From Eukaryota sp. TZLM1-RC (Eukaryota; Protista; Metamonada: BaSk clade): 64,000 bases of DNA. The notes under the pieces are model-generated. The model did not search any database, was not told where the DNA came from, and worked only from the letters and a program-made list of their open reading frames with translations. Location of the stretch: positions 620,001 through 684,000 of the forward strand of contig JAUPSS010000001.1 of assembly GCA_040285825.1 (NCBI GenBank), in the 5' to 3' direction. The position numbers and the translations under genes were made by a program. Below, piece by piece: positions 5,070-56,703 of the stretch; within the stretch, counting starts at the first letter, position 1; every line of letters begins with the position of its first letter.

Positions 5070-5092
5070 CCAATCTAAATAAAAATAAAACT

Positions 5093-5398: not shown

Positions 5399-5424
5399 TG
5401 ATAGTCAAAAAATAAAAATATTTA

Positions 5425-12420: not shown

Positions 12421-12503
12421 TGTGTATGCATTAAATTTAATATGTCGTATATCACCTGTGATAGAATATTGTTCATGTTAAGCAGCAAAAAAATGTTGAA
12501 AAA

Positions 12504-12896: not shown

Positions 12897-13012
12897 AAAA
12901 TTGATTTTTTTTAAAATGAATCTCCAATACGCTATTGGTTATACGATTGTTTTAACTTACTTTTTAATTGTATACTTTTTATTTATGGAGGAAAACCACA
13001 ATGAGAAGAAGA

Positions 13013-13741: not shown

Positions 13742-13780
13742 TTTTCAATTAAAAAAACCCATTGATATTCCTAACGCTAT

Positions 13781-14755: not shown

Positions 14756-14756
14756 T

Positions 14757-14960
14757 GAAACAATGAAAGATTTGATATTTTTTATGGCGATCACGGATTC
14801 AATTTGCCATTATTAAAAGATTACCTCGGTTTTTCAATCGAATAAGAGAAGCTTTAGCTGGACAGCAAGCAGATCAAGATTTTGTAGAGGAAATCTTGGT
14901 TCAATGATAGTCGTCCCATTAGTAATGAATTAATTAAATTAAGTGTGCAAATTCAATAAA
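14757..14960 (+). mobile_element. RLE retrotransposon 3' end (family B)
   Basis: Near-identical to 45265-45470 and similar to 30277-30483. Confidence 0.8.
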
Positions 14961-18000: not shown

Positions 18001-20754
18001 CAATACCATTCTTACTACTCGGCGCTCAAATTATCAGCTTCACTATTGGATTTCATTGTCCACGGCATCTCTTCTTCTTTGGATGTATTGGTTTACTCTG
18101 CTTCCTTTAAAAGATATCTTTCTTCAGTTAAAACCAGCAGAGATTTGGCCATCCAACGAGTCTTGGATGATGAAAAGTTAAGTAAGCTTAGGCGGGAAAG
18201 GATTTTAAAGCAACAGTTAACAGAGAAGGAAGCTACTGAAAGCAGATTGGAAATGTTAAAGTCCAAAAGACTTGGTAAAAGAGATACATCAGCTCGTCAA
18301 ATATTTGAAGAAGAGATCAAAGCACATCAGGACGTTTTAAGTGACCTGGCAAGTAGTGCAGAAGAGATCAAAAAGGATCATGATGACCTGTCAGGTCAAG
18401 AGAAGTCAAGTGACGTTGACGTATCTACTGATCAGAAACTTGATGAAGAGGTCACACCAGATCAAGATGACACGTCTGAGCCTCAACCATCATTTTTACT
18501 TCGAATGGCAACCAAACTTCAGTCAATCATTTTGAACTTTTTCAATATCAACATTTCTGACCTACCACCACGTCATCAAACGTCACCATTACGTTGGTTA
18601 AAGCACAATATCTATAGATACTCTTCTGTATTGTCTTGCTTGCTGTGCTATCTCGCTGCTTTGTGGTTTCCTTCAATTCCCACCGTGATGATTGCTTTCA
18701 CTACAATCACTTTTGGTTTAATGTCCAAATATGGAGGCAAAGCTAGGTTTTGGCAGTTTATTTTGGGAATTTATCTATCTTTATTATTAATCCATTACAT
18801 TTTCACCTTTCCTTTCTTTTGTTTTTGCGTTTCGCCATCAGATTCAATTACCATTTCCTTTGGTAAGTCATGTCTAGATCCCACCAAGTGTCCTGTTCCA
18901 AGGGAGCTTATCGATCCATCAAGTCACCCCTCAGCCCTCAGTTCGCAACTCATTTACCTTGTTGGTATTGCTCCTATAGGCAGCTTCCTCTTCTCCTACC
19001 CTCCCTTGCTGATTGCTGCATTGGGTATCGTTCTTCATCGTTCTATCTCGTTTAGAATGGGCAGGTGGGGAATTGATGTAGAGGAGAGAGTTGGGGTTCG
19101 TCAAGTTTGGGGTAGGGTCGTGGTCTTCTTCAAGACTCTAATGGAGAAGCGTTTCGACGCTATTGGAGTAGACCTCTACCCATTTATGTTTTTTATTGAT
19201 ATACTTCAGTTAATTGCGCTTCCATTTGCCTTTTTTAGTAGCTCAACAGCTTCCCAGTCGGTAATCCAATCAGTCCAGCTCAGTTATTTACCTGGTTTCC
19301 TTGCAATTTGGTTGATTGTTCAGTTTCTGTTAATCATTATTGATAGAACTCTTTTCTATTTGAGATTCGCAAGACTCAAAGCTCTGGTTCATTTTATTTC
19401 AAATTTCACTGTGTTAATTGTTTTTTGTTTAATTTTCCCCCGTAGTAATCACGAATTACCAATTAATGCACCTTTTCTCCTAGTCGCGGCCTTTCTGCGG
19501 TTTGTGGCTGCCGTGTTGAGCTCTCTACAACTTCGTTTTGGTTTTCCGCCACCTTCCTCCAAAGCCTTTTTGATGAAGTCTTACGGTTCTTTTAATAATT
19601 ATGGATACCAAGCCTTTAGAGTCATTCCTTTTCTTTATGAAATGAAATGTTTGTTGGATTGGTCTTTGACTACTACTGCTTTGGAATTTAATTACTGGAT
19701 GCGAATAGAAGATATTTATTCATCGTTATTCTTAATCAAATGCAGAAGGTTATCTACAGCGAAAAGGGGTCGAAATTTTGGCGACCCACAACCAAAATTT
19801 GACAAATTTTCGCAAGGATTTCTTTTGTTTTTCGGTCTTACGCTATTATTATGTTTGCCTTTAATTTTATTTAGTTCTGCTAACCCAGTCTCCAAACCAA
19901 ACCCTATCCAACAGGCCAGTATTGATGTAAGTTTCAATAACTACTTGCCCATTTTCTCTCAGCATGAAGTGCACAAAGTCGATGTTATCCCGGCTACACA
20001 ATACAATGCAATTGTTAGCCATCACTCCTTGCTCCGCGATTCTAACCGTGCAGATGTAAGAAAGATTACCTTTTTCACTTCATCTGATTCTGTGTGGACC
20101 ATTGCTCCTCCTGCCATGAACGGGCTAGTAGAAGCTTTGGAGGATGGAAGGGGAATAGTATCTGTTACTTTGTCGTTTAACAGACACTATCCAAGCGATA
20201 GGAGGACAGCAAAGGGATGGTACTCGTTCAATTTAGATCATGAACATTGTTTAGAGTTGGCCATGTTATTTTCTGGTGATTTAGAAGAAGTAATAATACC
20301 TTTACTTCCAAGAGCTGCATTAATTCCTCTGGCCGAATCACCAATCTTTTCTGATCAACGTGAGGATACTCTCATTCAGCGCAGAGAACGTGACGGACAG
20401 ACTTATTGGTTGATCAAGGATGCTGATTCAAGAGAACCATTCTATATGTATACTTATAGTTTAGAATCGACCGCTGCACTTGGTGCTTATGCCAGCGGGG
20501 GTTTGATTGGATTGTATCTATCAATTGTGATTGGTGTTGGTAGGTTTGTTCGACTTTCATTTTCGGACAGCAAATCCCAAATTTTTGTTTCGGCTCTCCC
20601 AAATGTGGATAAATTACTTGAAATCTGTGAGGATTTGTTCCTGGCCAGGAGTATCTCAGATTTGGTGCTTGAAGAATCAATTTACAAGGAAATCATTCAG
20701 ATATATAGAGATCCAGATACTTTGATTGAATTAACCACACCACCAGTTAAATAG
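15045..20754 (+). CDS. PIEZO: Piezo-family mechanosensitive channel, copy 1 (~1900 aa after correcting four +1 homopolymer indels)
   Basis: Many TM helices, beam coiled coil and the PFLYEMKCLLDW...WMRIEDIY Piezo signature. Indels near 16955, 17135, 17175 and 17593 are absent from copy 2. Confidence 0.92.
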
Positions 20755-21071
20755 TTATTGGTGATAGGTAGTTAATTTAAATAGTGTTTTCGTGCTATAT
20801 CTTTTGAATAAATAAAGCAGTATCTTTTTTGAGCTACTGTCTCGTTATCCGCTACGTTAACTCCAATAATCAATTTCAACAAAATGGTTTTAAAACAAGC
20901 TTTTCATGGGATGGATGCTCTTTAATTGAGCGACTTTTGAGCGTTAAACAAAGCATTTTCCTGCTGTATTTGGAATGGTAGCATCCGATACAAGACGTGA
21001 TGTGAAGTTATGTCAAATACTACAATGTTGTGAATTTCCAGATGATAGAAGAAAAAATGGCTACCAAAAAC

Positions 21072-23758: not shown

Positions 23759-25759
23759 ATGCTTAAAGCATGTCCAGTATCTATTATAAATGTGTCTAGT
23801 TATCAGTTTGTGCATGTTTCATTGTTTTGTGGATGTAAGGAGTTGAAAATACACCAAATTTTAAAAGTAACTGAAACTGAGAAATCAATCATTTCTGATT
23901 GTCTGCACTTTCCGTTTTCAGCAAGGACTATGCAGTCATGGGCACGTGCCTGCTCCCTTCATCAGTTCTTTGGGCGGCCAGTGTGTGATTACATTGATGG
24001 GCAGCTGACCAAGGTGACCACCATGGCTCACCTCGGCAGTTTGCTGGCCAGAGTTTTTGCTGTGCGCTTCCCTGAAGACAGTCATTTCCTGACTCAGCAT
24101 CAATTCTGGATCCAGTGTCTTGACTTTGTGGCGGTCTCTAAGCCAAAAGTCAGACATCCATTTAACAGACCTGGCAAAGGCCATGTGTATGAGAAGCTCG
24201 AGCGAATCTCTACATCATGGCCGTTTGCTGTCTTGTTCTTGTCAAGAACAGGTCGTAATCATGCACTACCCACTAGTAGGCCTCTACAACAACTAGTGGA
24301 TGCAAAGTGCCGCCAGCTGCAAGGCAACTGCCAGCAGCTTCTTGCTGATGGACTTGTGTCGTGGAAGCTTAACTTCTTCCGCTCGTATGCGGTAGGTTAT
24401 AACTGCCCTGCACCAGCCACTTATGCTGGTTCTGTTCTTCACAACAGCACGAACTTTCGTGAACCTCTTCTTTCTTGGTTCAACACTCACCATAACATGG
24501 CTCTTACTCTGTTTAACTATTTGGTTGGTGATCCTCAAAGGTACAACACTCTTCTTTCTTCTCGAAGAGTGACTCTTAATCAAGAGAACAGTACCTACAT
24601 CTTTCGTTGCGGCTTAACAATCCAAAACTACCTGGAGCAAGCCTTTCCATATACCTTTAGACGACATAGACTCACTCCCATCGCTAGTTTGAAGCCTGCT
24701 TTTGTCCCCTTTTCCACATGGGTTCTCAACCATTTTATCTCCAAAAACACATCACAAACAATTTTGAAAAACCCTTATTTATTTTTTAAAACAAAAGCTA
24801 ATGACTACAACATGTCTTCTAATGGTGATAGTGTCCGTATAACTTTCAAACCGCACCCCAAAGCAACACGAGTGAGATTGTCTGGAGAAGCCTTGAGTAA
24901 TAAGAGATCCAGAGGGGAACTTGACTACTACGAAACCACTCGGAATAGAAAACATACCTTGCAAGCCAAGGTTGAACGGCCAAGACCTCGCCAGAAACCA
25001 AAAGCTACTGAGTGGCAGGCACCTGATGACCAAACGGAAATGGTGTTCTGGGCCATCGACCCCAACCACTCAAATCTATGTGGTTCCAGTATTGGAACAG
25101 GTTCAGGGCCGACCGTATCCAATATCTTCCTGGCACCAAAGCAACGAAAAATCAATCACTCCGCTTCACTGACCCACTCATCAATAGATGTTTATGACGT
25201 GCAGAAATTGAACCATTATCTGCTTGAAATATCAGCTATCGGTGACTATAAGGACTATGAAGGTAATAACGTAAGACGATCATTACTAAAGCAGCAATTA
25301 TATCTGAGTGCTCGAAACGCATTGAGGAGAAACACATTTGACTTCTTTATAAGAAAACAGAAAAGATTCAGCTCCATTATCAACAAAGTGAAAAAATTTG
25401 CAAACGGTCGAGAAGTAAAGGTGTGGCTTGGCAATGGAGGTGGTGGTACATCACGTCAAAAAGTGAAAACTCCACGTAAGGCATTTCTCAAGTTGTTACA
25501 ACGTTCATCTGCTAATGTGAAGATCGGAGATGAATATATGACATCTGCAAAGGTGAACTGCTGCAAGATGCTACACCAAAAGATCTATAGAGAAGTTGAT
25601 GGTGAAGTTAAAGTTCACAACGCCTATTTCAGTTGTCCGGAATGTAATCAAGTATGGTCTAGAGACATTTCTGCATCACTAAATCAGCTAGAAATTGCAA
25701 TTAGTGAGCACTACTATGGAACAAGACCAGAAGCGCTCCAGAGACCACAAAGAAACTAG
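23759..25759 (+). CDS. Fanzor / TnpB-family RNA-guided endonuclease
   Basis: RuvC-I WAIDPN, VWLGNG, RuvC-II GDEYMTS, Zn finger NCC...CPEC, RuvC-III WSRDISASLN and terminal RP. The true start may be the ATG at 23930. Confidence 0.88.
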   Translation: MLKACPVSIINVSSYQFVHVSLFCGCKELKIHQILKVTETEKSIISDCLHFPFSARTMQSWARACSLHQFFGRPVCDYIDGQLTKVTTMAHLGSLLARVFAVRFPEDSHFLTQHQFWIQCLDFVAVSKPKVRHPFNRPGKGHVYEKLERISTSWPFAVLFLSRTGRNHALPTSRPLQQLVDAKCRQLQGNCQQLLADGLVSWKLNFFRSYAVGYNCPAPATYAGSVLHNSTNFREPLLSWFNTHHNMALTLFNYLVGDPQRYNTLLSSRRVTLNQENSTYIFRCGLTIQNYLEQAFPYTFRRHRLTPIASLKPAFVPFSTWVLNHFISKNTSQTILKNPYLFFKTKANDYNMSSNGDSVRITFKPHPKATRVRLSGEALSNKRSRGELDYYETTRNRKHTLQAKVERPRPRQKPKATEWQAPDDQTEMVFWAIDPNHSNLCGSSIGTGSGPTVSNIFLAPKQRKINHSASLTHSSIDVYDVQKLNHYLLEISAIGDYKDYEGNNVRRSLLKQQLYLSARNALRRNTFDFFIRKQKRFSSIINKVKKFANGREVKVWLGNGGGGTSRQKVKTPRKAFLKLLQRSSANVKIGDEYMTSAKVNCCKMLHQKIYREVDGEVKVHNAYFSCPECNQVWSRDISASLNQLEIAISEHYYGTRPEALQRPQRN

Positions 25760-31333: not shown

Positions 31334-31641
31334 AGTTCGGGGAGGAGCTGTGGAAAGGCGTGATTGGCCAAAGATTTGCTTGGAGGGAAGTCTTGGATTG
31401 TAATACACGGGTCCAGGTGTATGAAGTCTTTGCTTAAAGTGTCATATTCATTATGGGGATTCTCATGTAGCACGATATGTCCAAAATTGAGTAATAAATG
31501 GTGGTCTAGATGGGGCACGTATAGAATGTAACAAATATATGAAATATGTTGTGTGAAATGGCACCTATGACCAATGGGAAATAGAAATTAGCATGAAGGA
31601 ATGTTCATTGGCATTTTTGGTAATTATCATATTTTCTCACA

Positions 31642-33855
31642 ATGCTCTCGTGTCCACATTGTTCAATGGATTTCAACGAAGAGTCTCGTGTGCCACTGGT
31701 TGTTTGCAGTCAGCGCCATAGTGTATGCGGTGTATGCTCTGATGCTGTGGAATCCTGTCCGATATGCAATGAAGATATCCTGCCGTCACCGGAAGTCAAC
31801 CTCAGTTTGCGCGATATAGCCAAAGCTTCTTGCAAGGAGGACCTCTGTGTACACATTCCCTCTAACCAGGTCAAACTTTTGCACATGATTGGACAAGGAG
31901 GATATGCCCAGGTGTTTGCCGCTTCTTGGTTTGATTCAGACGTCGCCGCCAAGACTGTTGCTCTCACAGAAGAAGGTAAGAAACGACTGAGGAAAGAGAT
32001 TGGTATTATGGCCAAGATTGATCATCCCTTTATCCTCCGCGTTTTTGGTCTGGTCAGCTTAATGGACAGACTCGCCATAATTATGGAACTTGCTGAAGGT
32101 TCTCTGCCAGTGCCGTCAAGATTGACTAAACAAAGTCTCTTGTTTGCAAAAAGGATCTGCCAGGCAGTTCGTTTTCTGCACTCCAAATCACTTGTGCATG
32201 GAGATCTCAAGCCCGAGAACATTCTTTTTGTGAATGGACAAGTGAAATTAGCCGATTTTGGAACATCCAGGACTGTTGCCAAGACTTCCACGGCCACCAA
32301 TCTATCATGTACAGTAAGATATGCCGCATTAGAACAGCTTGATAACAAAGTTTCTCTTGCTTCTGACATTTACGCTATTGGAATCATCCTTTGTGAGTTA
32401 CTCTGCAATTATAGACCATTTGTAAACATGGAACAAGTTGCCATTATGGGTGCAAAGTTTTTGAACAAGCCGTTGGCTTTAAGTGACCAGATTCCCCATG
32501 TTCTCAGAGAATTAATCGCCCAATGTTGCTCTTCAGATCCAGCTGCCAGACCAAGTATTGCTCAAGTTCTTCTAGTTTTGGATCAATTGGATGACTTTGC
32601 TGAAGAATGTGATGAAAATCCTATAAGTATTAACAATGATGTTCAAACGCAACTGCAAACTGCCAACTCTACAATCGAGTCTCTACGAAAGAATGTTACT
32701 GATTTGGAGGCTTCCAGTCAACAACTCACCAACGATTTGACAGAACGGGATTCCAGAATTGCCCGGTTGGAAGAAGAAAGGGCTGGTATCAATGCCCCCA
32801 ATCAACACCTCAGTCACATTTTGGATGAACGTGATGCTAGAATTGCCACTATGGAAGAAGCTTTAAATGCCAGCAAGGCCGGTATTGCTGAGCAAGATAC
32901 AGAAAATGCCAACCTTAGATCTATCATTGATGAATTGGAAAAGCAAAATACTCTACTCAGTAGAACTAATTCTGATTTAGCAAGCAGAATTGCTGACCTT
33001 GAAGCGTTGTTGAAAGAGTGCCATTGTAATCAACCTTTGAACAATATCGATGATCATCATCCTCCATCTAAGGAAGAAATTTTGGAAGACATCAAGTCGA
33101 ATGTAAATTGGAATGGATTGGTGGATGGGGTGAAGAAGGGTGTTGAGGCTTTGGTTGATGGTTCTATCACTGAATTGAATCTTTACAAGAACAAAATTAC
33201 CTCTGAAGGCGCTAGTGCTCTCGCCCGTGCTCTGGAGAGCAATTCCACTCTGACTACATTGCGTCTTCAGTACAACAACATTACCTCTGAAGGCGCTAGT
33301 GCTCTCGCCCGTGCTCTGGAGAGCAATTCCACTCTGACTAAATTGAATCTTTGGAACACCAACATTACCTCTGAAGGCGCTAGTGCTCTCGCCCGTGCTC
33401 TGGAGAGCAATTCCACTCTGACTGAATTGGATCTTAGCAACAACAAAATTACCTCTGAAGGCGCTAGTGCTCTCGCCCGTGCTCTGGAGAGCAATTCCTC
33501 TCTGACTACATTGTATCTTCAGTACAACAAAATTACCTCTGAAGGCGCTAGTGCTCTCGCCCGTGCTCTGGAGAGCAATTCCTCTCTGACTACATTGCGT
33601 CTTCAGTACAACAACATTACCTCTGAAGGCGCTAGTGCTCTCGCCCGTGCTCTGGAGAGCAATTCCACTCTGACTAAATTGGATCTTTGGAAAAACAACA
33701 TTACCTCTGAAGGCGCTAGTGCTCTCGCCCGTGCTCTGGAGAGCAATTCCTCTCTGACTGAATTGAATCTTGGGGAGAACAACATTAGCAATTCAACCAA
33801 ATCTAAACTTCGACAAATAGCATCTAATCGTTCTTCTCTCCGAATTTTCGTTTAA
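31642..33855 (+). CDS. RING-like Zn finger / protein kinase (TKL-like) / coiled coil / LRR protein, paralog 1
   Basis: CPHC...C...H..C..C...CPIC; GQGGYA, AAK, HGDLKPEN, DFG; 7 full 28-aa RI-like LRRs plus a terminal one. Confidence 0.93.
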   Translation: MLSCPHCSMDFNEESRVPLVVCSQRHSVCGVCSDAVESCPICNEDILPSPEVNLSLRDIAKASCKEDLCVHIPSNQVKLLHMIGQGGYAQVFAASWFDSDVAAKTVALTEEGKKRLRKEIGIMAKIDHPFILRVFGLVSLMDRLAIIMELAEGSLPVPSRLTKQSLLFAKRICQAVRFLHSKSLVHGDLKPENILFVNGQVKLADFGTSRTVAKTSTATNLSCTVRYAALEQLDNKVSLASDIYAIGIILCELLCNYRPFVNMEQVAIMGAKFLNKPLALSDQIPHVLRELIAQCCSSDPAARPSIAQVLLVLDQLDDFAEECDENPISINNDVQTQLQTANSTIESLRKNVTDLEASSQQLTNDLTERDSRIARLEEERAGINAPNQHLSHILDERDARIATMEEALNASKAGIAEQDTENANLRSIIDELEKQNTLLSRTNSDLASRIADLEALLKECHCNQPLNNIDDHHPPSKEEILEDIKSNVNWNGLVDGVKKGVEALVDGSITELNLYKNKITSEGASALARALESNSTLTTLRLQYNNITSEGASALARALESNSTLTKLNLWNTNITSEGASALARALESNSTLTELDLSNNKITSEGASALARALESNSSLTTLYLQYNKITSEGASALARALESNSSLTTLRLQYNNITSEGASALARALESNSTLTKLDLWKNNITSEGASALARALESNSSLTELNLGENNISNSTKSKLRQIASNRSSLRIFV
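33169..33786 (+). repeat. 84-bp coding tandem repeat (LRR array)
   Basis: Core GAAGGCGCTAGTGCTCTCGCCCGTGCT repeated 7 times at an 84-bp period. Confidence 0.95.
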
Positions 33856-33965
33856 TAAACACATTTCAGTTACTTTTTTCATCAATACAAAACCAATAAT
33901 AAAATCGTCCAACACCAATACAAATCAAAACCCAATATAAACTAGAAAAATCAACAACATCATTC

Positions 33966-34150
33966 GCCAACATCGTAGTCCAGTGGGTTTGCTCTTCGTT
34001 CTCTGCTTTGGCAACAGGGTTCGAATCCTATCTGCTGCACTTCTGGCAAAAGGGGACCCCAAAGTGGGAGCCAGCATTCCCTTTCCCACTTTCCGGGTCT
34101 GACTGCATGGTGCTTGATCAATGAGGGTGATTCTGAAGATTGGGCATTTT
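33966..34150 (+). repeat. tRNA-derived, structured SINE-like repeat
   Basis: A box TAGTCCAGTGG at 33976, B box GGTTCGAATCC at 34018, GC-rich hairpin at 34055-34099. Copies near 56811, 60378 and 60841. Confidence 0.55.
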
Positions 34151-34194
34151 GGGTTTTTATGGATCTTGATTTTGCATGTTATTCGCAAAAATTT

Positions 34195-35660
34195 CCTTTT
34201 GTGAGAAATTGTTACTGTAATTTTTTAACAAATATATATATATTTTCTGCGAATAATCAAGTCAAATCAAAAGAAACTAAAACACACAAGAAACAAAACT
34301 ATTTGGGAACACTTCTGTACAAAGCGAAAATGATACGATTCTTCCATAAATTCCCTGCAAAATTGTTACTACTTGAACGACACAAATTACCAAAAATCAT
34401 TGATAAAATTCAAGGCGGATTGTCCAATGTTGCCAAAAATCGAAAAGACAAAAGTAACAAACGAAAACTTTGAGTAAAGATTCTTATTTAAATCATTTAA
34501 TATTGCAGTATATTTTCCTCTTTTTCGGTCTTCACTAAGTAATACATCATCACAATAAATAAAAGCAAAGGTATCTCTTGATCATCAGAATCGAGACTAA
34601 AACAATTATTGTTTCCAGACGCATGTGTGGAAATTTTTTTAAACTCTTGAGGAACTTCGTAATTGACTTGGCCTTTGTTTGTGAATCTTGCAAGGCTGTA
34701 GATTGTTCAAAATATTATACGTGTTACAGCACAGGTAACTCCTCTATCTTCTACCTTCCTTTTCAATTTGCTTCTGGAAATTTACTAATAATTTAAAAGA
34801 AGGAATATGGGATATCACACGGACATGGAAATTTGTTTGCTTAAAGCTAAAACAGTATTGTCTTACAACTCCAAAAATACTTGAAAATACTAACGGAAAC
34901 TGTTGCAGAGTTTATACCGGTTTAAAATTCGAATCAGATTTTTTGATCACTTAGAATTGTTGCAAAACCTGTATTGTTCTTCGATCGTGAACAAGACAAA
35001 TTGTTAAATAACATGCTCTTAATTGAACGTATTTTATTGTTCTAGTGTTCTAGTGTTTTATTCTAAGTGTTTCAAGAATATTCAGTTAACCAGAGAACGA
35101 TCTTTATGAAGAGCTATCAAAATTGCCACTTCATAATCTTTTATAGACTGGTTTTTACTTATAAATTTTGTTTTGTCAAATTCGATTTAAAAATAGGAAT
35201 TTATGCAAAATTCATCACTATTTCACAATGTTTGCAAAATTCCGATCTCCTTTGATGAAAAGAGTAAAATTAAAGAGTACAACGTACCCTTATCGTAGGT
35301 AGGATGTGTTGCGCATGTTAAGTATTATTATACAATTTTTATGGCTCACAGCAAACGCTTATCAAAAAAAGATTGTAATTTCATATCATCTGGTGTCAAT
35401 AAGATTATCCGTTGTGTCCTATCTTTTTCTGCTTTTGCTATTCATCCTTTAATGAATGAATTAATACAAGAATTTCAAGCTATTCAAATTACTGCTTATA
35501 TAAATGAAATTTTTAATTATTGGTCCAATTGCTTCATTGAGAAAAATTGTTAGAATTGTTCAACAACTATTATCAAATTAGTCTTTCCTTAAATATTTCT
35601 AAATGCTTGTTGATTGGTAAAGAGATTGCTGAACTGGTTATTGATGATCAAATTGTTCCT
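34195..35660. mobile_element. Mosaic of decayed RLE fragments (family C on minus, family A-like on plus)
   Basis: Matches 36680-37080, and on the opposite strand parts of the family A element near 7600-7870 and 8630-8850. Confidence 0.7.
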
Positions 35661-39917: not shown

Positions 39918-40462
39918 TCCTTCTGTTTTCTTTTAAGAAATCTTTCTTCCTATTTATTTCCATTTTGAACTTATCGATTCCGTTGTTTCATAATTAATTT
40001 CGTTTATTAGCCCTTTTATCTTGTAATTCTGCTGTAATAAGTCACTGTACTCTAGTTGAAAACATCATTTATGCGAATGTTGAATAAAAGTACATTTTGA
40101 GTTTGAATTTATCTGGCTTGTTTAAATGTTTATTTCATTAATAAATTGAATTTCTATAATTGAACATCATACAATGCTTCACTGAGCTTGAATTATGTCT
40201 TTACACCCAAGATCACCATTATAAATACAACTGTCTAATATCAATTTTTTCCTGTCAAAGTAGTTATACCAACATCCACACAGCAGAGATAACTCTATGA
40301 TGGCGATTTGATCAATTCCTAGAGTATGTGTACCTCAAAATATCAAAACCCATTAGAATGGTTTATGCCATTATCCTATATATATTAATGCGAGTGTGAG
40401 TGGGTGTTATATTCAATTAGTCTTTTCATAAAATAAATAACAGTGGTTTGATTGAATTCCTC

Positions 40463-41197
40463 ATGAAACTAACTGTTATAGGCCACTGGGCAGGATATCC
40501 TAAAGCTGATGACGCTACCTCTGGTTATTTGCTCCAGCACGATGGTTTCAATGTTCTTATTGATTGTGGTAGTGGTGTATTGTCCAACATGTTGCACTTC
40601 GTTTCTTACACCGAACTGCATGCAGTTGTCATCTCCCACTACCACCATGATCATATTGCTGACGTAGGTCCACTACAATACGCTAGGCTAGTGGAAACAC
40701 AGCTAGGCAAGGTGAATTCTCCACTCAAAGTATATGGCCCATCGTATGATCAGGATACACTGTCAAAGTTAAAGAAACCTCCATTTGTTGACACTGTTCC
40801 ATATGACCCGCAAAGCCGAAAAACAATAGGTCCGTTTGAGTTGGAATTTCATGAAAATATCCACTCAATTAAATCATTTGCCATTAAGGCTACTTGTGGA
40901 TCCAAATCAGTAGCTTATTCAGGAGACACTGCCTATCATGAGACATTGGCAGAGTTTGTGAGTGATGTAGATTTGTTCATTTGCGAGGCGAGCTTCTATC
41001 CTTGGCAAGATGCAGTGCCTTATGGACACTTAACAAGTACAGAAGCAGCGAGAATTGCTCAAAAAGCGTCAGTAAATCATCTTTTACTTACACATTTACC
41101 TCACTTCGGAAATGTAAACGAGTTGCTTGAGGATGCTAAGAAACATTTCGAACAGAGAACGAGTCTGGCATTCAAAGGGTGGTGTTGTGAGATATAG
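40463..41197 (+). CDS. MBL-fold metallo-hydrolase (YhfI / RNase Z-like, bacterial type)
   Basis: MKLTVIG, LIDCGSG, SHYHHDHIAD, YSGDT, LLTHLP; 244 aa from the ATG at 40463. Confidence 0.9.
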   Translation: MKLTVIGHWAGYPKADDATSGYLLQHDGFNVLIDCGSGVLSNMLHFVSYTELHAVVISHYHHDHIADVGPLQYARLVETQLGKVNSPLKVYGPSYDQDTLSKLKKPPFVDTVPYDPQSRKTIGPFELEFHENIHSIKSFAIKATCGSKSVAYSGDTAYHETLAEFVSDVDLFICEASFYPWQDAVPYGHLTSTEAARIAQKASVNHLLLTHLPHFGNVNELLEDAKKHFEQRTSLAFKGWCCEI

Positions 41198-41397
41198 TTG
41201 TTTTTGTGGTTTGATTCCATTGTGGTTTGATTCCATTGGAATGTGGAAGTGTAAAGAAAATGGTGTGTTAAAGTAACTACAAGTGATTCAATCAATCAAG
41301 ATGATTCAATCAATCAACATTTTGACACCATAAATTCAATAGACTTGATGACTAGACACTAGCATTAGTAGAGAAAAATTCGTTAATGAAACTTTAT

Positions 41398-43440
41398 TTA
41401 TAAGTCAAGTTTGAGACAACTTTTGACAAATTTCTTCAAAAAAGATTTCTTGACAAATTCAGGATCTTGGTTGACATTCCAATGCCCGTACTTTCTATAA
41501 CAAGAAGGGTCGTTTTTCATATCACACTTGTCGCCAAACTTGCACTTATAAGGAATCACTGGTATAGGTTCATGGGAAAATGTGAAGCGATGGAGAGGAT
41601 CCTTAAGACCTTCACAACTTACCCCATGTTCACATACTTCCAGCTCAACGTGGTCAAATAGTCTGCAGTGTTCCTCGTTTTCCACATCTTTACAAAATCC
41701 TGAATATCGACATATATGTTTAAACCCCCTTAAATGCTTGGCTCCCTCGGAGGTCTTTCCCATATGATCCACATAGTAATACTCGCAGGTATAAGGATTA
41801 GGACATTGAGGTAGTTCAGAGTTTATTTTAGGAGCACTTTTAGTAATACAGGAAGATCTTGGTTTTTGAAACGATTTTGTGGATGTAAAATGTTGAAAAA
41901 ATGTTCGATGGGATAGTGAAGCCAACTGGTTACAATTTTTAAAGGGACAACGTGGGACATGGTGAAATTTTGAAATATGATCTCTTTCTTCAACACGTTG
42001 GCAGGGAAAGAGCAAATCATGACATGGAAGCATAAAATTTCGAGAATTTTGAATTAAATCGTATTTAATTAAATCTTGGCATTGTGCTAGACAATCCCCA
42101 AATCCACTAAATATAATTGAATCAAAAAACTTGTGAAAAATGGAAAGTGCAAATGATATAACAGTCATTGCACCAGGAATAGGGTTTCTGAAAGCTCCAC
42201 AACCAAGAGGGCAAATCACCAAATGAGTAATTCCGTGTTTAATGGCAGCTAAAAAGACACAAGTCCATCTCTTGTATAGTAATTGTAAATCATCAAAATG
42301 AGCATAGTCTTCACCAAAGTTTTCAACTTCCTTTTTTTGTGGATTTTGAGGAGCAGCAGTACTTATAATGGTAACTCTTTGTGGTTTTTCAAGCAATTGA
42401 CATCCAGTAGCTTCCGTTGTTTTGAAAATTTCCACATTTTCGGTAACTACAACATCAATTTTAGCTGTTTTCCATGGATATGCTACCCTTTGGCCAGAAA
42501 CTACCTGTCCACCATACTGTTCAGGATCCAAAGCAGCACCTAGAGTTGTTCTTCTGAAAAGTGATTCTTCCTGAGCACTGGCACCCGTGAGATAACCACC
42601 ACCAGGATGTTCCTCATTAGCCATGTTGAGGACACCAACACGGTTAGTGGCAGGATCAAGGCCAATCGCACATTCAAGACAGTCTTTTTCCAAAAATTCG
42701 ATCGGTTTAACATCATTAGTTGCAAAAAAATCAAAATCCTGATTAAAAAAATCGTCAAAAAAATAGACAGAATTACATAGCAAATTACAATTCAATCTAA
42801 TAAAGGATTCACCATTCAGAGCATAACCATTGGCATTCACGACTCTCAAAGTCTGAGCTAATATGATGCACAACACAAGCCTATAACAATTGTTGAATCT
42901 TCGTCTGAGAGAGGGAAGGTCATAGGAAATGATTAGGAAATGGATTAATTGATCATTGTAATTTTCGACTAAATTTCCATAGTAATGCAGAGCCAAATCA
43001 ACATGGGCCTTTTCTTCGGCAAAACAAACAGGATACGCAAGAGCAGGATTGAATTCCTCAACCAAAACTAATGTAATTTCTCTATTTTTCCCTTTAATTC
43101 TACAATTAAAAATCGTACCTCTTTTTAGAACACATTCATCCTCTGTGCTGACCAGAACAACTCTTCTATCCCCAAACAAAGTGATCTTGTGCTTTGTGGA
43201 AGTGAGGCTCTGGTCAATGACGTGTTTCAGAGTTGAGAAATTTGGACAAGGAATGAAGACTAGTTCGAATAAATAGAATTCATTAAAAGAAATTCTAAAA
43301 TTTTGGTTGGAAGTTTCAATTGATTGAATGATCTCTGATTGATCTTCTTTTGAAAAGACCAAATATTCGAACAATGAAATGTCAGCCAATATTTGGTCAT
43401 TTAGATAGATTGTCTGTGAATTCGGTAATAGTTGAGCCAA
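41398..43440 (-). CDS. Bacterial-type poly(ADP-ribose) glycohydrolase (DUF2263/TIGR02452-like) with C-terminal PBZ-like Zn fingers
   Basis: LNMANEEHPGGGYLTGASAQEESLFRRT and LGCGAFRNP; about six Cx4-6C...Hx5H repeats. Confidence 0.85.
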   Translation of the reverse strand: MAQLLPNSQTIYLNDQILADISLFEYLVFSKEDQSEIIQSIETSNQNFRISFNEFYLFELVFIPCPNFSTLKHVIDQSLTSTKHKITLFGDRRVVLVSTEDECVLKRGTIFNCRIKGKNREITLVLVEEFNPALAYPVCFAEEKAHVDLALHYYGNLVENYNDQLIHFLIISYDLPSLRRRFNNCYRLVLCIILAQTLRVVNANGYALNGESFIRLNCNLLCNSVYFFDDFFNQDFDFFATNDVKPIEFLEKDCLECAIGLDPATNRVGVLNMANEEHPGGGYLTGASAQEESLFRRTTLGAALDPEQYGGQVVSGQRVAYPWKTAKIDVVVTENVEIFKTTEATGCQLLEKPQRVTIISTAAPQNPQKKEVENFGEDYAHFDDLQLLYKRWTCVFLAAIKHGITHLVICPLGCGAFRNPIPGAMTVISFALSIFHKFFDSIIFSGFGDCLAQCQDLIKYDLIQNSRNFMLPCHDLLFPCQRVEERDHISKFHHVPRCPFKNCNQLASLSHRTFFQHFTSTKSFQKPRSSCITKSAPKINSELPQCPNPYTCEYYYVDHMGKTSEGAKHLRGFKHICRYSGFCKDVENEEHCRLFDHVELEVCEHGVSCEGLKDPLHRFTFSHEPIPVIPYKCKFGDKCDMKNDPSCYRKYGHWNVNQDPEFVKKSFLKKFVKSCLKLDL

Positions 43441-43443
43441 ATT

Positions 43444-45115
43444 TTAGTCAATAACAGAATGATTAATTGGTGATCCATCTTCGACAACGACTGTGATCGA
43501 CGTCAAGGCTAAAATTTTAGAAGTTTGATCTCTTCCCCTGCTCTTGAGCTCTACTATTTCCTTTTGCTTATCCATTAATTTTTGTTTCAATTTTTGAATC
43601 AATTGATTGTTTTTTTCATTATTATTGACCGCCAACTGATCACTGTTAGTGGACACTTCTGAAATTTCTGCCTTTAAACCCAAAACTTCCTTTTCCAAAT
43701 TTTCAATGATTTCCGATCGGTCGGCTACACAATTTTTCAAAGAGTCAATGATAGCAACAAATTTTTCATTAATTTCTTTAATTTTCCCATATTGCCCTTC
43801 TAATTCATCATGAGAGTCAGAAAGATCCTTGAAAGCTGATTCTGATTGGTTCAAGGAAACAGAAAGTGATTTAATAACTGATGAATAATTGGTAGATTTT
43901 TCGAAAAGATCACAAAAAAGATCATAAAGCTCATTGAAAGAAGTTGAAAATGTTTTGAATTCTGAACGTTGTGACTGAATGGTTTCCTCTAACTGAGTAA
44001 GTTTTGACTCCAATTCAACAATTAACGTAGACTTAAATTGAATTTCTGTATTCAATTCAGCAATCAAGTCTTGATTATTCTTGATTGATTGACAATTTGA
44101 TTGATTCTCGGTTGATAATTCCGAATTACTGGCTTTAAGTGACATAATTTCCGATTCCAGTGATTCTTTTTCAGACGTTAGAGATTTGATTTGAGTAGTT
44201 AATTCAGCAATTGATGAATTTAATTCTGCAAATTTAGAACTTTTCATCAATAATTCTTGATTCTTTGAATTAATTTCAGCATCTTTTTCTTTCAATAATT
44301 CAGTTTTATCACCATTATTTTTTTCATTTTTCTTAATTTCTTCTTTTAATTCACTATTCAACAGACCCAACTCATCTAATGCACTTGATAATTCATAATT
44401 TTTACTGTTAATTAAGGTGATTTCAACTTTTAACTCAGTAATAATTGAGTTTAACTGTTCCTTTTCCAGAATTAATTCCTTTTCACTCTCCGAGTTACTA
44501 CTAATTTTTGCTTTAATTTGATCCAATTCAAGTTCTCTTTCGGATATAACACTACCTAATTTTTCTTTTTCTAGCACAACCAAGTTATAATTTGTTTCTA
44601 ATCTAACCAACGAGTCAGTTTTGAGCTGACAAGTTTTCTGACATTCTGAATTTTTCGAAGTGATCTCTTCTAACTGAGACTTAAAATTTTAACACTGTTC
44701 CTCAGTCAAGGTTAAATTTGACCGAAGCTCTTGAATTTTATCGGAAATGTCTTGATTTTTGAGCTTCCAAGTCTTGTTTTTCTTCACTAACTTTGTTGAA
44801 ATTTCGTTGTAATTTTTCATAAAGTTTTGATAATTCCTGATTTTTTGACCGTCATGTCATTTAATTGATTGGTAACGTCAGCAATTTTGACCTTATCAGA
44901 TTCTACTTTGGCTTTCAAATGATTAATCTCTTCCTTTAAAAATCCAACTTGTCGTTGATTGAGCTTCTTTGATTCAAGCTCAAAGTTTTTAAAATTTTGT
45001 TCCAAAATTTCGTAATCTGACTTTGACTCTGCAAGACTTTGGGTTAATTCTTCACATTCCTGTTCGAATTCAGCAGACTTCCGTTGAAAACCTTTCAACT
45101 TGCCAATTTGAGACA
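43444..45115 (-). pseudogene. Long coiled-coil region, in frame with the PARG ORF and 5'-truncated by an RLE fragment
   Basis: Heptad-rich ORFs 43444..44610 and 44817..45116; the junction reads GAC TAA AAT TTG into the PARG frame. Confidence 0.7.
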
Positions 45116-50853: not shown

Positions 50854-51145
50854 TTATTGGTGATAGGTAGTTAATTTAAATAGTGTTTTCGTGCTATATC
50901 TTTTGAATAAATAAAGCAGTATCTTTTTTGAGCTACTGTCTCGTTATCCGCTACGTTAACTCCAATAATCAATTTCAACAAAATGGTTTTAAAACAAGCT
51001 TTTCATGGGATGGATGCTCTTTAATTGAGCGACCTTTTTCACTTCACCTTTTCTAGTGTAGCTTCTGAAATACTTCCACAACAAATCGCATTCGCCAAAG
51101 TTTATTGGGTGCAAAACTTAATTACATTGAACTATAAGGAAACAT

Positions 51146-53694: not shown

Positions 53695-56600
53695 ATGCTC
53701 TCGTGTCCACATTGTTCAATGGATTTCAACGAAGAGTCTCGTGTGCCACTGGTAGTTTGCAGTCAGCGCCATAGTGTATGCGGTGTATGCTCTGATGCTG
53801 TGGAATCCTGTCCGATCTGCAATGAAGATATCCTGCCGTCACCGGAAGTCAACATCAGTTTGCGCGATATAGCCAAAGCTTCTTGCAAGGAGGACCTCTG
53901 TGTACACATTCCCTCTAACCAGGTCAAACTTTTGCACATGATTGGACAAGGAGGATATGCACAGGTGTTTGCCGCTTCTTGGTTTGATTCAGACGTCGCC
54001 GCCAAGACTGTTGCTCTCACAGAAGAAGGTAAGAAACGACTCTGGAAAGAGATTGGTATTATGGCCAAGATTGATCATCCCTTTATCCTCCGCGTTTTTG
54101 GTCTGGTCAGCTTAATGGACAGACTCGCCATAATTATGGAACTTGCTGAAGGTTCTCTGTCAGTGCCGTCAAGATTGACTAAACAAAGTCTCTTGTTTGC
54201 CAAGAAGATCTGCCAGGCAGTCCGTTTCCTGCACTCCAAATCACTTGCACATGGAGATCTCAAGCCCGAAAACATTCTTTTTGTCAATGGGCAAATCAAA
54301 TTGGCCGATTTTGGAACATCCAGGACTGTTGCCAAGACTTCCACGGCCACCAATCTATCATGTACAGCTCGGTATGCAGCCTTGGAACAGTTTGAGAACA
54401 AATTGTCTCTTGCCTCAGACATCTATGCGATTGGAATCATCCTTTGTGAGTTACTTTGTAATTATAGGCCATTTGTCAATATGGATCAGCTTGCCATAAT
54501 GGGAGCTAAGTATTTCAAGACACCATTTGCTTTGGGTGAACACGTTCCCAGTGTGCTCAAAGAATTAATCGCCCAATGTTGCTCTTCAGATCCAGCTGCC
54601 AGACCAAGTATTGCTCAAGTTCTTCTAGTTTTGGATCAATTGGATGACTTTGCTGAAGAAGGTGATGAAAATCCTATTAGTATTAACAATGATGTTCAAA
54701 CGCAACTGCAATCTGCAAACTCCACAATCGAGTCTCTACGAAAGAATGTTACTGATTTGGAGGCTTCCAATCAACAACTCATCAACGATTTGACTGAACG
54801 GGATTCCAGAATTGCGCGGTTGGAAGAAGAAAGGGCCGGTATCAATGCTTCCAATCAACACCTCAGTCACTCTTTGGAAGAACGTGATGCTAGAATTGCT
54901 ATTATGGAAGAAGCTTTAAATGCCAGCAAGGCCGGTATTGCCGAGAAAGATACAGAAATTGCCAACCTTAGATCTACCATTGATGAATTGGAAAAGCAAA
55001 ATACTCTACTCAGTAGAACTAATTCTGACTTATCAAGCAGAATTGCTGACCTCGAAGCGTTGTTGAGAGAGTGCCATTGTAATCAACCTTTGAACACTAT
55101 CGATGATCATCATCCTCCATCAAAGGAAGAAATTTTGGAAGACATCAAGTCGAATGTAAATTGGAATAGATTGGGGGATAAGGTGAAGGAGGGTGTTGAG
55201 GATTTGGTTGATGGTTCTATCACTAAATTGAGTCTTCAGTTCGACGACGACGACGAGAGCAATTCCTCTGACTCAACTCTGACTGAATTGGATCTTCGGT
55301 ACAACAACATTACCGCTGAAGGCGCTAGTGCTCTCGCCCGTGCTCTGGAGAGCAATTTCACTCTGACTACATTGCATCTTGAGAACATCAACATTACCGT
55401 TGAAGGCGCTAGTGCTCTCGCCCGTGCTCTGGAGAGCAATTCCACTCTGACTGAATTGGATCTTTGTGAAAACAACATTACCGATGAAGGCGCTAGTGCT
55501 CTCGCCCGTGCTCTGGAGAGCAATTCCACTCTGACTACATTGGGTCTTCGGTACAACGAAATTACCGCTGAAGGCGCTAGTGCTCTCGCCCGTGCTCTGG
55601 AGAGCAATTCCACTCTGACTGAATTGAATCTTAGGGACAACAACATTACCTCTGAAGGCGCTAGTGCTCTCGCCCGTGCTTTGGAGAACAATTCCACTCT
55701 GACTAAATTGGTTCTTGGGGAAAACAACATTACCTCTGAAGGCGCTAGTGCTCTCGCCCGTGCTCTGGAGAACAATTCCACTCTGACTACATTGGGTCTT
55801 GAGCACAACGAAATTACCTCTGAAGGCGCTAGTGCTCTCGCCCGTGCTCTGGAGAGCAATTCCACTCTGACTGAATTGAATCTTTGGATCAACAGAATTA
55901 CCGCTGAAGGCGCTAGTGCTCTCGCCCGTGCTCTGGAGAGCAATTCCACTCTGACTGAATTGAATCTTTGGTGCAACAGAATTACCGCTGAAGGCGCTAG
56001 TGCTCTCGCCCGTGCTCTGGAGAGCAATTCCACTCTGACTGAATTGAATCTTCGGTCCACCGAAATTACCTCCGAAGGCGCTAGTGCTCTCGCCCGTGCT
56101 CTGGAGAGCAATTCCTCTCTGACTACATTGTATCTTTGGTCCAACAGCATTACCGATGAAGGCGCTAGTGCTCTCGCCCGTGCTCTGGAGAGCAATTCCA
56201 CTCTGACTACATTGTATCTTGAGTGCAACAACATTACCTCTGAAGGCGCTAGTGCTCTCGCCCGTGCTCTGGAGAGGAATTCCACTCTGACTGAATTGAA
56301 TCTTGACTCCAACAAAATTACCTCCGAAGGCGCTAGTGCTCTCGCCCGTGCTCTGGAGAGCAATTCCACTCTGACTTCATTGGATCTTCAGCACAACAAA
56401 ATTACCTCTGAAGGCGCTAGTGCTCTCGCCCGTGCTCTGGAGAGAAATTCTACTCTGACTACATTGGGTCTTGGGGGCAACAACATTACCTCTGAAGGCG
56501 CTAGTGCTCTCGCCCGTGCTCTGGAGAGAAATTCTACTCTGACTACATTGGGTCTTGGGGGCAACAACATTACCGCTGAAGGCGCTAGTGCTCTCGCCCG

Positions 56601-56703
56601 TGCTCTGGAGAGCAATTCCACTCTGACTGAATTGTATCTTTCGTACATTAATTCCAGACTTCGACAAATAGCATCTAATCGTCCTTCTCTTACCGTTTAT
56701 TAA
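53695..56703 (+). CDS. RING-like Zn finger / kinase / coiled coil / LRR protein, paralog 2
   Basis: Same architecture as 31642..33855, with 16 full LRRs plus a terminal one. Confidence 0.93.
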   Translation: MLSCPHCSMDFNEESRVPLVVCSQRHSVCGVCSDAVESCPICNEDILPSPEVNISLRDIAKASCKEDLCVHIPSNQVKLLHMIGQGGYAQVFAASWFDSDVAAKTVALTEEGKKRLWKEIGIMAKIDHPFILRVFGLVSLMDRLAIIMELAEGSLSVPSRLTKQSLLFAKKICQAVRFLHSKSLAHGDLKPENILFVNGQIKLADFGTSRTVAKTSTATNLSCTARYAALEQFENKLSLASDIYAIGIILCELLCNYRPFVNMDQLAIMGAKYFKTPFALGEHVPSVLKELIAQCCSSDPAARPSIAQVLLVLDQLDDFAEEGDENPISINNDVQTQLQSANSTIESLRKNVTDLEASNQQLINDLTERDSRIARLEEERAGINASNQHLSHSLEERDARIAIMEEALNASKAGIAEKDTEIANLRSTIDELEKQNTLLSRTNSDLSSRIADLEALLRECHCNQPLNTIDDHHPPSKEEILEDIKSNVNWNRLGDKVKEGVEDLVDGSITKLSLQFDDDDESNSSDSTLTELDLRYNNITAEGASALARALESNFTLTTLHLENINITVEGASALARALESNSTLTELDLCENNITDEGASALARALESNSTLTTLGLRYNEITAEGASALARALESNSTLTELNLRDNNITSEGASALARALENNSTLTKLVLGENNITSEGASALARALENNSTLTTLGLEHNEITSEGASALARALESNSTLTELNLWINRITAEGASALARALESNSTLTELNLWCNRITAEGASALARALESNSTLTELNLRSTEITSEGASALARALESNSSLTTLYLWSNSITDEGASALARALESNSTLTTLYLECNNITSEGASALARALERNSTLTELNLDSNKITSEGASALARALESNSTLTSLDLQHNKITSEGASALARALERNSTLTTLGLGGNNITSEGASALARALERNSTLTTLGLGGNNITAEGASALARALESNSTLTELYLSYINSRLRQIASNRPSLTVY
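55282..56640 (+). repeat. 84-bp coding tandem repeat (LRR array)
   Basis: 16 copies of the same 27-bp core at an 84-bp period. Confidence 0.95.

What the first reader, a model, noticed from the sequence alone, without database searches (positions are those of the whole stretch)
31642..33855. Kinase-LRR receptor-like family with a frozen scaffold and a hypervariable binding face
Seen: two paralogs (also 53695-56703) with 7 versus 16 full repeats. The 27-bp core is identical in all 23 repeats, silent sites included, while the x positions of LTxLxLxxNxITx change in nearly every repeat. No TM segment is evident. Known: these positions form the concave ligand-binding face of LRRs, diversified in VLRs and NLRs. 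Inference: a cytosolic, rapidly diversifying sensor coupling recognition to kinase and possibly ubiquitin output, a candidate protist immune or recognition system driven by repeat shuffling.
Basis: partly seen in the sequence, partly recalled or inferred. Interest (0 to 1): 0.8.

Follow-up and report, generated by a model that had tools for sequence, protein, structure and literature searches.

The report
Fast-diversifying LRR sensor kinases, Skoliomonas
A free-living, bacteria-eating protist has a young cluster of genes for probably cytosolic zinc-finger kinases whose near-identical leucine-rich repeats differ mainly at four residues on the predicted binding face and are reshuffled between gene copies, the pattern seen in immune-type receptors of fungi and brown algae, but their ligand, their expression and their job are untested.

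Summary
Observation confirmed. The window is from Skoliomonas litria (Eukaryota sp. TZLM1-RC). Both ORFs encode RING finger, non-RD TKL-like kinase, coiled coil and a ribonuclease-inhibitor-type LRR array (7 and 16 units of 84 nt). I collected 11 such genes on one contig (90 units). Codons 4, 6, 8 and 9 have pN 0.53 against pS 0.04 for the unit; 106 of 107 four-fold third positions inside them are fixed, and all alleles are linked by single-base steps. That fits point mutation plus diversifying selection, not a mutagenic hotspot or a DGR. Units are reshuffled within and between genes. The scaffold is young or homogenised rather than frozen (pN/pS about 0.65; the 27-nt core is exact in 70 of 90 units). 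The same LRR module sits on other N-termini, and homologous RING-kinases in sister species carry TPR or SPRY-like tails. It evolves like fungal HIC NLR and Ectocarpus LRR arrays but has no NOD or Roc domain: a new variant of a known kind. Ligand, expression and strain variation were not shown. The scan had already noted this family on neighbouring paralogues of the same genome.

The parts
31642..33855 (+). Gene 1 (G1): RING-kinase-coiled coil-LRR, 737 aa, single ORF
   Evidence: identical to P0001 on the 4.04-Mb contig of Eukaryota sp. TZLM1-RC
31651..31767 (+). RING-HC (C3HC4) zinc finger, C4 C7 C22 H26 C29 C32 C39 C42
   Evidence: ligand spacing read; zf-RING_5 E 0.0017, below the curated cut-off; homologues hit Sina_RING at E 4e-5
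31870..32595 (+). TKL-like protein kinase, non-RD (K104, E119, H186-G-D188, N193, D205-F-G, E231)
   Evidence: Pkinase E 4e-45; best solved relatives BRAF, TAK1, DLK; motifs
32315..32507 (+). Divergent tract in the kinase C-lobe (about aa 225-289), one of two haplotypes in the family; G1 shares it only with L002
   Evidence: 43 nt differences to G2 in aa 223-292, pS 0.55, pN 0.12
32641..33015 (+). Long helix, probable coiled coil (aa 334-458)
   Evidence: AlphaFold helix H334-458; weak coiled-coil Pfam hits
33070..33159 (+). Two-helix N-cap of the LRR domain, shared with other LRR genes of the genome
33163..33750 (+). Seven 84-nt (28-aa) RI-type LRR units; hypervariable codons 4, 6, 8, 9
33751..33855 (+). 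Terminal LRR unit with variable x residues and C-terminal cap
33856..34534 (.). 3' flank shared at about 90% by most collected kinase-LRR paralogues (to 34357 in L005, 34199 in L009); part of it is a dispersed and tandem repeat; no tRNA or Rfam hit
53695..56703 (+). Gene 2 (G2): paralogue, 1002 aa
55216..55275 (+). Broken first LRR unit of G2: the helix is replaced by four GAC codons, frame kept
55276..56619 (+). Sixteen 84-nt LRR units of G2

Best explanation
A young, clustered family of cytosolic recognition proteins in an arms race. SHOWN: architecture RING - non-RD TKL-like kinase - coiled coil - RI-type LRR horseshoe; four residues per repeat on or just after the concave beta-strand are under strong diversifying selection; units are duplicated, lost and exchanged within and between genes; genes spread mostly by segmental duplication; the LRR module moves between different N-terminal modules. 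INFERRED mechanism of diversification: high unit identity drives unequal crossing-over and short gene conversion, which homogenise the scaffold and recombine point mutations at the x codons into new binding surfaces that selection keeps. INFERRED mechanism of action: the LRR face binds a fast-changing non-self protein (virus, intracellular or ingested bacterium, or a polymorphic self/kin protein); binding clusters or releases coiled-coil dimers, which activates the kinase by proximity and the RING as an E3 ligase, leading to ubiquitin-dependent disposal of the target or a defence/death signal. Odds: selection plus recombination as the cause of the pattern about 0.9; non-self or parasite sensing as the job about 0.6; the clustering-activation step about 0.35.
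For: pN 0.53 at x codons versus pS 0.042 over the unit, 90 units. Tree-free minimum count: 41 non-synonymous events on 9.1 sites versus 18 synonymous on 19.0 sites, ratio 4.7, p 9e-9. Codon-model likelihood on x codons rises to omega 8-32 (lnL -546.6 at omega 1, -519.1 at omega 8), scaffold optimum between 0.6 and 1. 106 of 107 four-fold third positions inside x codons keep the site's own base, A, T, G, C at codons 4, 6, 8, 9. 72 different x combinations in 90 units; 122 of 160 site pairs fail the four-gamete test; association between codons is mainly at 3-6 nt. The nearest unit is in another gene for 43 units, own gene for 30, tied for 17; arrays of duplicated blocks share no unit order although Piezo flanks are 98-99% identical. 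Scaffold pS 0.036 is below the 0.095 of the unique 5' part. Strands at unit positions 4-6 in a model with pLDDT 94-98 over the LRR; fold matches NOD2 LRR Z 30.5, rmsd 2.1. Same spacing of selected sites (0, +2, +4, +5) as Ectocarpus type I LRRs, sites 15, 17, 19, 20 (PMC3341825). [quoted passage not shown] Homologous RING-kinases in sister species end in TPR arrays, SPRY-like or UBA domains. A related LRR module sits behind an MLKL_N-like domain (P0023; Pfam E 8.5e-4, atlas score 0.88).
Against: No ligand, phenotype or expression data. No run on record as RNA holds the gene; the laid contigs cannot show expression. One strain only, so balancing selection and array polymorphism are untested. 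Units are not independent and recombination can inflate tree-based omega; the within-x minimum count alone is marginal (p 0.05). Recurrent mutation can also break the four-gamete test. The RING hit is below Pfam's cut-off and one paralogue (L006) lacks the RING. The non-RD motif is shared with non-LRR homologues, so it is not specific evidence. The MLKL-like call for P0023 was not confirmed by structure (pLDDT 55, no Foldseek match).
Confidence: 0.6

Rival explanations
1. Intragenomic conflict or self-recognition: the LRRs track fast-evolving products of selfish elements (retrotransposons, Fanzor, endogenous virus) or act in kin/mating-type discrimination, with the same evolutionary signature but no external pathogen.
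For: The region is packed with non-LTR and Gypsy retroelements, a TnpB/Fanzor-like ORF and a virus-like segment. Fungal HIC receptors HET-D/E recognise polymorphic self protein HET-C (PMC12222747). PRDM9 and KRAB zinc fingers show the same array logic (own knowledge).
Against: No direct link to any element; RI-type LRRs with a kinase are not known DNA readers (own knowledge); no co-varying partner gene was identified.
Confidence: 0.17
2. Adaptor family for ordinary cell biology, like the Giardia Nek-ankyrin expansion: kinase targeting or E3 substrate selection, with different arrays addressing different self proteins or organelles.
For: Giardia, in the sister lineage, has 198 Neks, 133 with 1-26 ankyrin repeats, some with coiled coils and RING domains, evolutionarily mobile, of obscure role (PMC3218828). 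RI-type LRRs are common in axonemal proteins.
Against: Giardia ankyrin arrays are described as divergent, not near-identical. Stable self targets do not explain omega far above 1 at four sites, nor complete loss of unit order between 98-99% identical duplications.
Confidence: 0.1
3. Targeted mutagenesis or programmed assembly (DGR-like, AID-like or VLR-like) writes the variable codons.
For: Third positions A, T, G, C at the four codons superficially fit AAN templates; reverse transcriptases lie nearby; two unit variants in short-read contigs are not among the 120 collected units.
Against: Codon 4 third-position A is fixed in 90 of 90 units; scaffold adenines deviate 0.7%, less than C (2.6%) or G (1.7%); first bases of codons 8 and 9 are not A-rich. 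All 45 links among x-codon alleles are single-base steps. No template or stray cassette with up to 5 mismatches to the core in the window or 11 loci of about 22 kb. The RT ORF at 6559-8709 has an upstream CCHC-knuckle ORF and looks like a non-LTR retrotransposon. The unmatched variants can come from uncollected paralogues.
Confidence: 0.05
4. Neutral recent expansion with relaxed constraint at surface sites, or an assembly/polishing artefact of a nanopore assembly corrected with short reads.
For: Scaffold pN/pS is only about 0.65; several copies show lesions (broken first unit in G2, insertion in L003, RING-less L006). The assembly was ABruijn plus Nanopolish plus Illumina correction (10.1101/2023.05.03.539051), which can blur near-identical repeats.
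Against: Relaxation caps pN/pS near 1, observed about 12. Errors would not spare third positions or avoid stops and frameshifts in 120 units. The 5' parts are under purifying selection (pN 0.029, pS 0.095). Short-read contigs hold x-variable units, one identical to an assembled unit of L010.
Confidence: 0.08

Closest known systems
Fungal HIC NLRs (Podospora HET-D/HET-E HNWD family; TPR and ANK HIC NLRs; PMC4986451, PMC12222747, PMC13449251)
   Same: Near-identical repeats under concerted evolution, a few hypervariable sites under diversifying selection, repeat-number variation, exchange between genes, association with transposable elements, combinatorial N-terminal modules.
   Different: No NACHT/NB-ARC ATPase; LRR rather than WD40/TPR/ANK (no LRR NLR found in fungi); output is RING plus kinase; unicellular host; function untested.
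Ectocarpus LRR-ROCO and LRR-kinase candidate receptors (PMC3341825)
   Same: LRR shuffling, rapid gene turnover, positive selection at four residues with the same spacing on the concave face.
   Different: There each 24-aa repeat is an exon; here 28-aa RI-type repeats lie in one intron-free ORF with near-zero silent divergence; no Roc-COR; kinase is N-terminal to the LRRs and preceded by a RING.
Animal NLRC3/NOD2-type RI-like LRR sensors (including coral expansions)
   Same: Same LRR class and fold: best non-Skoliomonas sequence hits are NACHT-LRR proteins; NOD2 LRR Z 30.5.
   Different: Similarity is limited to the LRR; no NACHT or death-fold domain.
Giardia Nek-ankyrin / Protein 21.1 families (PMC3218828)
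   Same: Metamonad expansion of N-terminal kinase plus variable repeat array, coiled coils and RING domains, fast turnover.
   Different: Nek versus TKL-like kinase; divergent ankyrin versus near-identical LRR; RING C-terminal there, N-terminal here; no reported site-specific positive selection that I read.
TRIM proteins (RING - coiled coil - SPRY) and plant non-RD LRR receptor kinases
   Same: RING, dimerising coil and a C-terminal variable recognition domain in one chain (TRIM, own knowledge); sister-species homologues end in SPRY-like domains; non-RD kinase plus LRR (PMC8463890).
   Different: No B-box and an inserted kinase; no signal peptide or TM segment, so not a surface receptor.

Membership tests
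NLR / STAND receptor | Central NACHT or NB-ARC ATPase | tested here: not met
   No such Pfam hit and no room in the model
NLR / STAND receptor | C-terminal superstructure-forming sensor repeats | tested here: met
HIC hypervariable repeat sensors (evolutionary class) | [quoted passage not shown] | tested here: met
   TRF 91% and 89% nucleotide matches over 620 and 1370 nt; scaffold p-distance 0.024-0.027
HIC hypervariable repeat sensors (evolutionary class) | Diversifying selection at a few ligand-facing sites | tested here: met
   positions
HIC hypervariable repeat sensors (evolutionary class) | Repeat exchange within and between genes, copy-number variation | tested here: met
   4-16 units per gene; (recurrent mutation not fully excluded for single site pairs)
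HIC hypervariable repeat sensors (evolutionary class) | Allelic polymorphism and balancing selection between strains | tested here: inconclusive
   Only Logan contigs of one main sample; no piece spans an array
HIC hypervariable repeat sensors (evolutionary class) | Ligand-specific non-self recognition that triggers a response | not testable with these tools
   needs bench work
LRR-ROCO | Roc-COR GTPase tandem; one repeat per exon in brown algae | tested here: not met
   no GTPase, no introns
LRR receptor-like kinase | Signal peptide, extracellular LRR, TM helix, C-terminal kinase | tested here: not met
   kinase precedes LRR; no TM segment by hydropathy or model
Variable lymphocyte receptor (VLR) | Incomplete germline gene assembled from flanking LRR cassettes; surface or secreted | tested here: not met
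   complete ORFs; no free cassettes within about 10 kb of 11 genes or in the window
Diversity-generating retroelement target | Template repeat, adenine-specific substitutions, DGR RT | tested here: not met
TRIM | RING - B-box - coiled coil | tested here: not met
   no B-box; kinase between RING and coil
Non-RD TKL-like protein kinase | Catalytic K, E, HxD, N, DFG present; no Arg before the catalytic Asp | tested here: met
   third glycine of the G-loop is Ala; activity not tested; TKL assignment rests on best hits, no tree
RING-HC E3 ligase | C3HC4 ligand spacing | tested here: met
   spacing exact; profile hit weak; ligase activity not tested

The most novel reading that the evidence does not exclude
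A NOD-free intracellular immune system in a single-celled eukaryote: a shared pool of interchangeable LRR units is recombined fast enough to give new receptors within growing cultures, and is plugged into RING-kinase, RING-pseudokinase, RCC1 and MLKL-like modules that dispose of intracellular parasites or kill the infected cell.
Probability: 0.1. Interest if true: 0.88.

Novelty: new variant of a known kind. Interest (0 to 1): 0.55.

Why it matters
Whether single-celled eukaryotes have diversified, receptor-based immunity is largely open; most examples come from multicellular fungi, algae, plants and animals. This family gives concrete, short, intron-free candidates in a culturable free-living metamonad, with the binding residues already marked by selection. 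It also shows the 'identical scaffold plus hypervariable face' strategy working without a NOD ATPase, wired straight to a RING and a non-RD kinase, and swapped among several N-terminal modules. Three searches of the paper library found no description of it. If the function is mundane, it is still a clean natural library of 28-aa LRR binders.

Tried and rejected
DGR/adenine mutagenesis: rejected. Local mutation hotspot: rejected, third positions inside x codons are fixed; the synonymous excess at x codons (4 events) is not significant, p 0.12. Strong purifying selection as the cause of the frozen scaffold: rejected, pN/pS about 0.65. Connectivity of codon alleles against random codon sets is only modestly unusual per site (p 0.01-0.16), so it is supporting, not decisive. 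Retroposition as the main route of spread: not supported for G1, G2, L001, L003, L004, which sit in duplicated blocks; L006 is cut at the 5' end and joined to a downstream retroelement, but the shared stretch runs about 380 nt past the element's apparent end, so transduction versus DNA duplication is unresolved. tRNA or ncRNA downstream of the genes: no ARAGORN or Rfam hit. TPR array of the sister-species homologue P0125: internally conserved, with replacement-only variation at three positions, but it falls into a few older unit types with high pS elsewhere, so selection there was not shown. Structure of the P0023 N-terminus: low confidence, no match. Reads: I laid them on 31400-33250 only (one unit), because the tool turns away long repeats; only Logan contigs exist, so array length, cell-to-cell variation and expression could not be read. 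First IQ-TREE run failed on thread count and was rerun.

Full report
Source. Gene 1 is identical to a protein on the 4.04-Mb contig of Eukaryota sp. TZLM1-RC, and its closest relatives are P9112_0131xx-0134xx proteins of the same contig, JAUPSS010000001.1 of GCA_040285825.1. I take this to be Skoliomonas litria, a free-living anaerobic bacterivore of soda lakes and sister to Fornicata (PMC11603281, 10.1101/2023.05.03.539051). The strain-to-name link rests on my own knowledge and on earlier scan notes; the paper's text did not contain the strain code. From offsets in those notes the window lies at about 620-684 kb of the contig (inference), so the 11 genes studied span about 0.65-1.29 Mb.

Observation. 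Both ORFs are intact and intron-free. The 27-nt core is present 7 and 16 times at exactly 84 nt spacing and nowhere else in the window. Silent sites in it are invariant in these 23 units. Across nine further genes the core is exact in only 47 of 67 units, so 'frozen' is a little strong. Gene 1 units 2-3 are repeated as units 6-7 (0 and 3 differences). Gene 2 has a broken first unit and a shortened cap.

Anatomy. Residues 4-42 have exact C3HC4 spacing, with a weak profile hit. Residues 77-318 are a kinase whose best solved relatives are BRAF, TAK1 and DLK, with K104, E119, HGD, N193 and DFG in place and no Arg before the catalytic Asp. AlphaFold gives one long helix at 334-458, a two-helix cap, and eight beta-alpha units at pLDDT 94-98. 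The LRR matches ribonuclease inhibitor by sequence (E 1.5e-52) and the NOD2 LRR by structure (Z 30.5, rmsd 2.1 over 240 residues). Unit positions 4-6 form the strand; 4 and 6 flank the buried leucine and 8-9 follow it, which by established LRR geometry is the concave face and its rim. I could not compute solvent exposure from the model. There is no TM segment.

Selection. From 11 kinase-LRR genes I extracted 90 units. At codons 4, 6, 8 and 9 pN is 0.53; pS over the whole unit is 0.042; scaffold pN is 0.024 and pS 0.036; codons 11 and 14 are intermediate, pN 0.29. The four sites carry 7, 11, 14 and 13 amino acids, rich in Tyr, Trp, Arg, Asn, Asp and Gly. A tree-free minimum count gives 41 replacement events on 9.1 sites against 18 silent events on 19.0 sites (ratio 4.7, p 9e-9; a lower bound because the sites are saturated). 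A codon model on a fixed tree prefers omega of 8 or more at x codons and 0.6-1 on the scaffold; recombination may inflate the first figure. The clearest test is inside the codons: first and second bases have diversity up to 0.7, while 106 of 107 four-fold third bases keep the base typical of that site. A hotspot would not spare them. Adenines are not the preferred targets, no template copy was found, and all alleles connect by single-base steps, which rules against a DGR.

Shuffling. There are 72 x combinations in 90 units; 122 of 160 site pairs show all four gametes; statistical association is mostly between codons 3-6 nt apart. Units are only slightly more alike within genes than between them (scaffold 0.024 versus 0.027, p 0.03). 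The nearest unit lies in another gene for 43 of 90 units, and arrays from duplicated blocks share no unit order although neighbouring Piezo DNA is 98-99% identical. Scaffold pS (0.036) is lower than pS of the unique 5' parts of the same genes (0.095 overall, 0.05-0.10 outside one divergent tract). So the repeats are more alike than the genes that carry them, as expected from concerted evolution. The 5' parts are under purifying selection (pN 0.029), which argues that the family is or recently was functional.

Modularity. Three genes (L007-L009) join the same LRR module, from about residue 420 on and 93-100% identical to gene 1, to a different RING and a degenerate RD kinase that lacks the glycine loop and DFG. 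RCC1 genes on two other contigs carry the same unit at about 95% scaffold identity in L010. P0023 puts an older version of the module behind a kinase-like domain and an N-terminus with a weak MLKL_N match; folding did not confirm that. In the other direction, the RING-kinase has 40-46% identical homologues in Skoliomonas GEM-RC1 and RCL that end in a 12-unit TPR array or SPRY-like domains, and in S. litria in UBA or a divergent LRR. A RING-kinase-coil chassis with exchangeable C-terminal binding domains is therefore a lineage trait, and the hypervariable LRR version was found only in S. litria within the reach of the word search.

Spread. The block Piezo - kinase-LRR gene - metallo-beta-lactamase - PARG recurs in the window and in L001, L003 and L004, which points to segmental duplication in a region rich in retroelements. 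L006 is 5'-truncated and fused to a downstream non-LTR element; transduction is possible but not shown.

Reads. No run on record as RNA was found. Logan contigs of the DNA sample cover the gene with paralogue-type differences; one 1.2-kb contig matches none of the eight collected type A genes at all listed sites (best 27 of 31), so more copies or alleles probably exist, or the contig is chimeric. Three short pieces show x-variable units; one equals a unit of L010, two are not in my set. A run labelled as another organism of the same study holds small near-identical pieces; I cannot say whether it is another strain or a labelling effect.

Mechanism. Shown: architecture, selection, shuffling, module exchange. 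Inferred: binding of a fast-changing ligand at the concave face; activation of kinase and RING by ligand-driven clustering of coiled-coil dimers, by analogy with TRIM ligases and RAF/RIPK-type kinases (own knowledge); a defence output. A virus-like segment in the same window (dNK, Rpb2 fragment, TFIIS-like ORF inside a Gypsy element) suggests that large DNA viruses reach this lineage, which offers a plausible selective agent but no link.

Comparison. The evolutionary mode is that of fungal HIC NLRs (PMC4986451, PMC12222747), which is reported across domains of life and enriched in ATPase-containing proteins (PMC13449251), and of Ectocarpus LRR genes, whose four selected sites have the same spacing (PMC3341825). 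It is not an NLR, ROCO, RLK, VLR, TRIM or DGR target by the defining features tested. Giardia Nek-ankyrin proteins are the nearest architectural parallel in the clade (PMC3218828). Verdict: real, well supported as a diversifying repeat-sensor family, new in architecture and lineage, function unproven. Earlier agents of this scan reached the same reading on neighbouring paralogues; I wrote my reading before opening their notes, recomputed the numbers here, and do not count their agreement as evidence.

Noticed in passing
window 32315-32507; L002: Two old haplotypes of the kinase C-lobe (P+1 loop to helix G) segregate among otherwise 95% identical paralogues; G1 and L002 carry one, six genes the other (pS 0.55, pN 0.12). 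Could change substrate docking.
   Followed up: partly
P0023 (P9112_000490): MLKL_N-like helical domain, degenerate kinase and an LRR module related to this family in one chain; profile and atlas support are weak, fold not confirmed.
   Followed up: partly
L012:10001-12451 (Skoliomonas sp. RCL, RCL1_008928): Homologous RING-kinase with 12 internally conserved TPR units, inserted among Gypsy-like ORFs; replacement-only variation at three unit positions.
   Followed up: partly
P0121, P0122 (GEM-RC1): Homologous RING-kinase-coiled coil with a SPRY-like C-terminal domain (atlas score 0.97): TRIM-like layout with an inserted kinase.
   Followed up: partly
L007-L009:10001 onward: Second RING-kinase type, lacking glycine loop and DFG, fused to the same LRR module; possible pseudokinase partners.
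   Followed up: partly
L011:12437-13544: In this RCC1-LRR gene ten consecutive units have the same x residues: an array that expanded without diversifying, a useful internal control.
   Followed up: no
window 15045-20938 and 45895-51037: Duplicated Piezo channel genes (98.6% identical), split into several ORFs; further partial copies in L003 and L004.
   Followed up: partly
window 23759-25759: 666-aa ORF with a C-terminal TnpB-type zinc-ribbon hit (Fanzor-like).
   Followed up: no
window 3819-14794: dNK, Rpb2 fragment and TFIIS-like ORFs between Gypsy protease and RT-RNaseH pieces, interrupted by a non-LTR element: virus-like segment.
   Followed up: partly
window 6050-9446 (-), 57558-59987, 61488-63917: Non-LTR retrotransposon family with CCHC knuckles; decayed copies directly downstream of G2, in a 3.9-kb tandem duplication.
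   Followed up: partly
window 40448-44610: Metallo-beta-lactamase-fold gene and microbial-type PARG gene that travel with the kinase-LRR genes in duplicated blocks.
   Followed up: no
window 34030-34534; L007:12923-19583: A repeat in the shared 3' flank forms tandem arrays elsewhere (about 890-nt period, 8 copies in L007); no tRNA or Rfam match.
   Followed up: partly
L003 about 12100-12140: T- and A-rich in-frame insertion before the terminal LRR unit.
   Followed up: no
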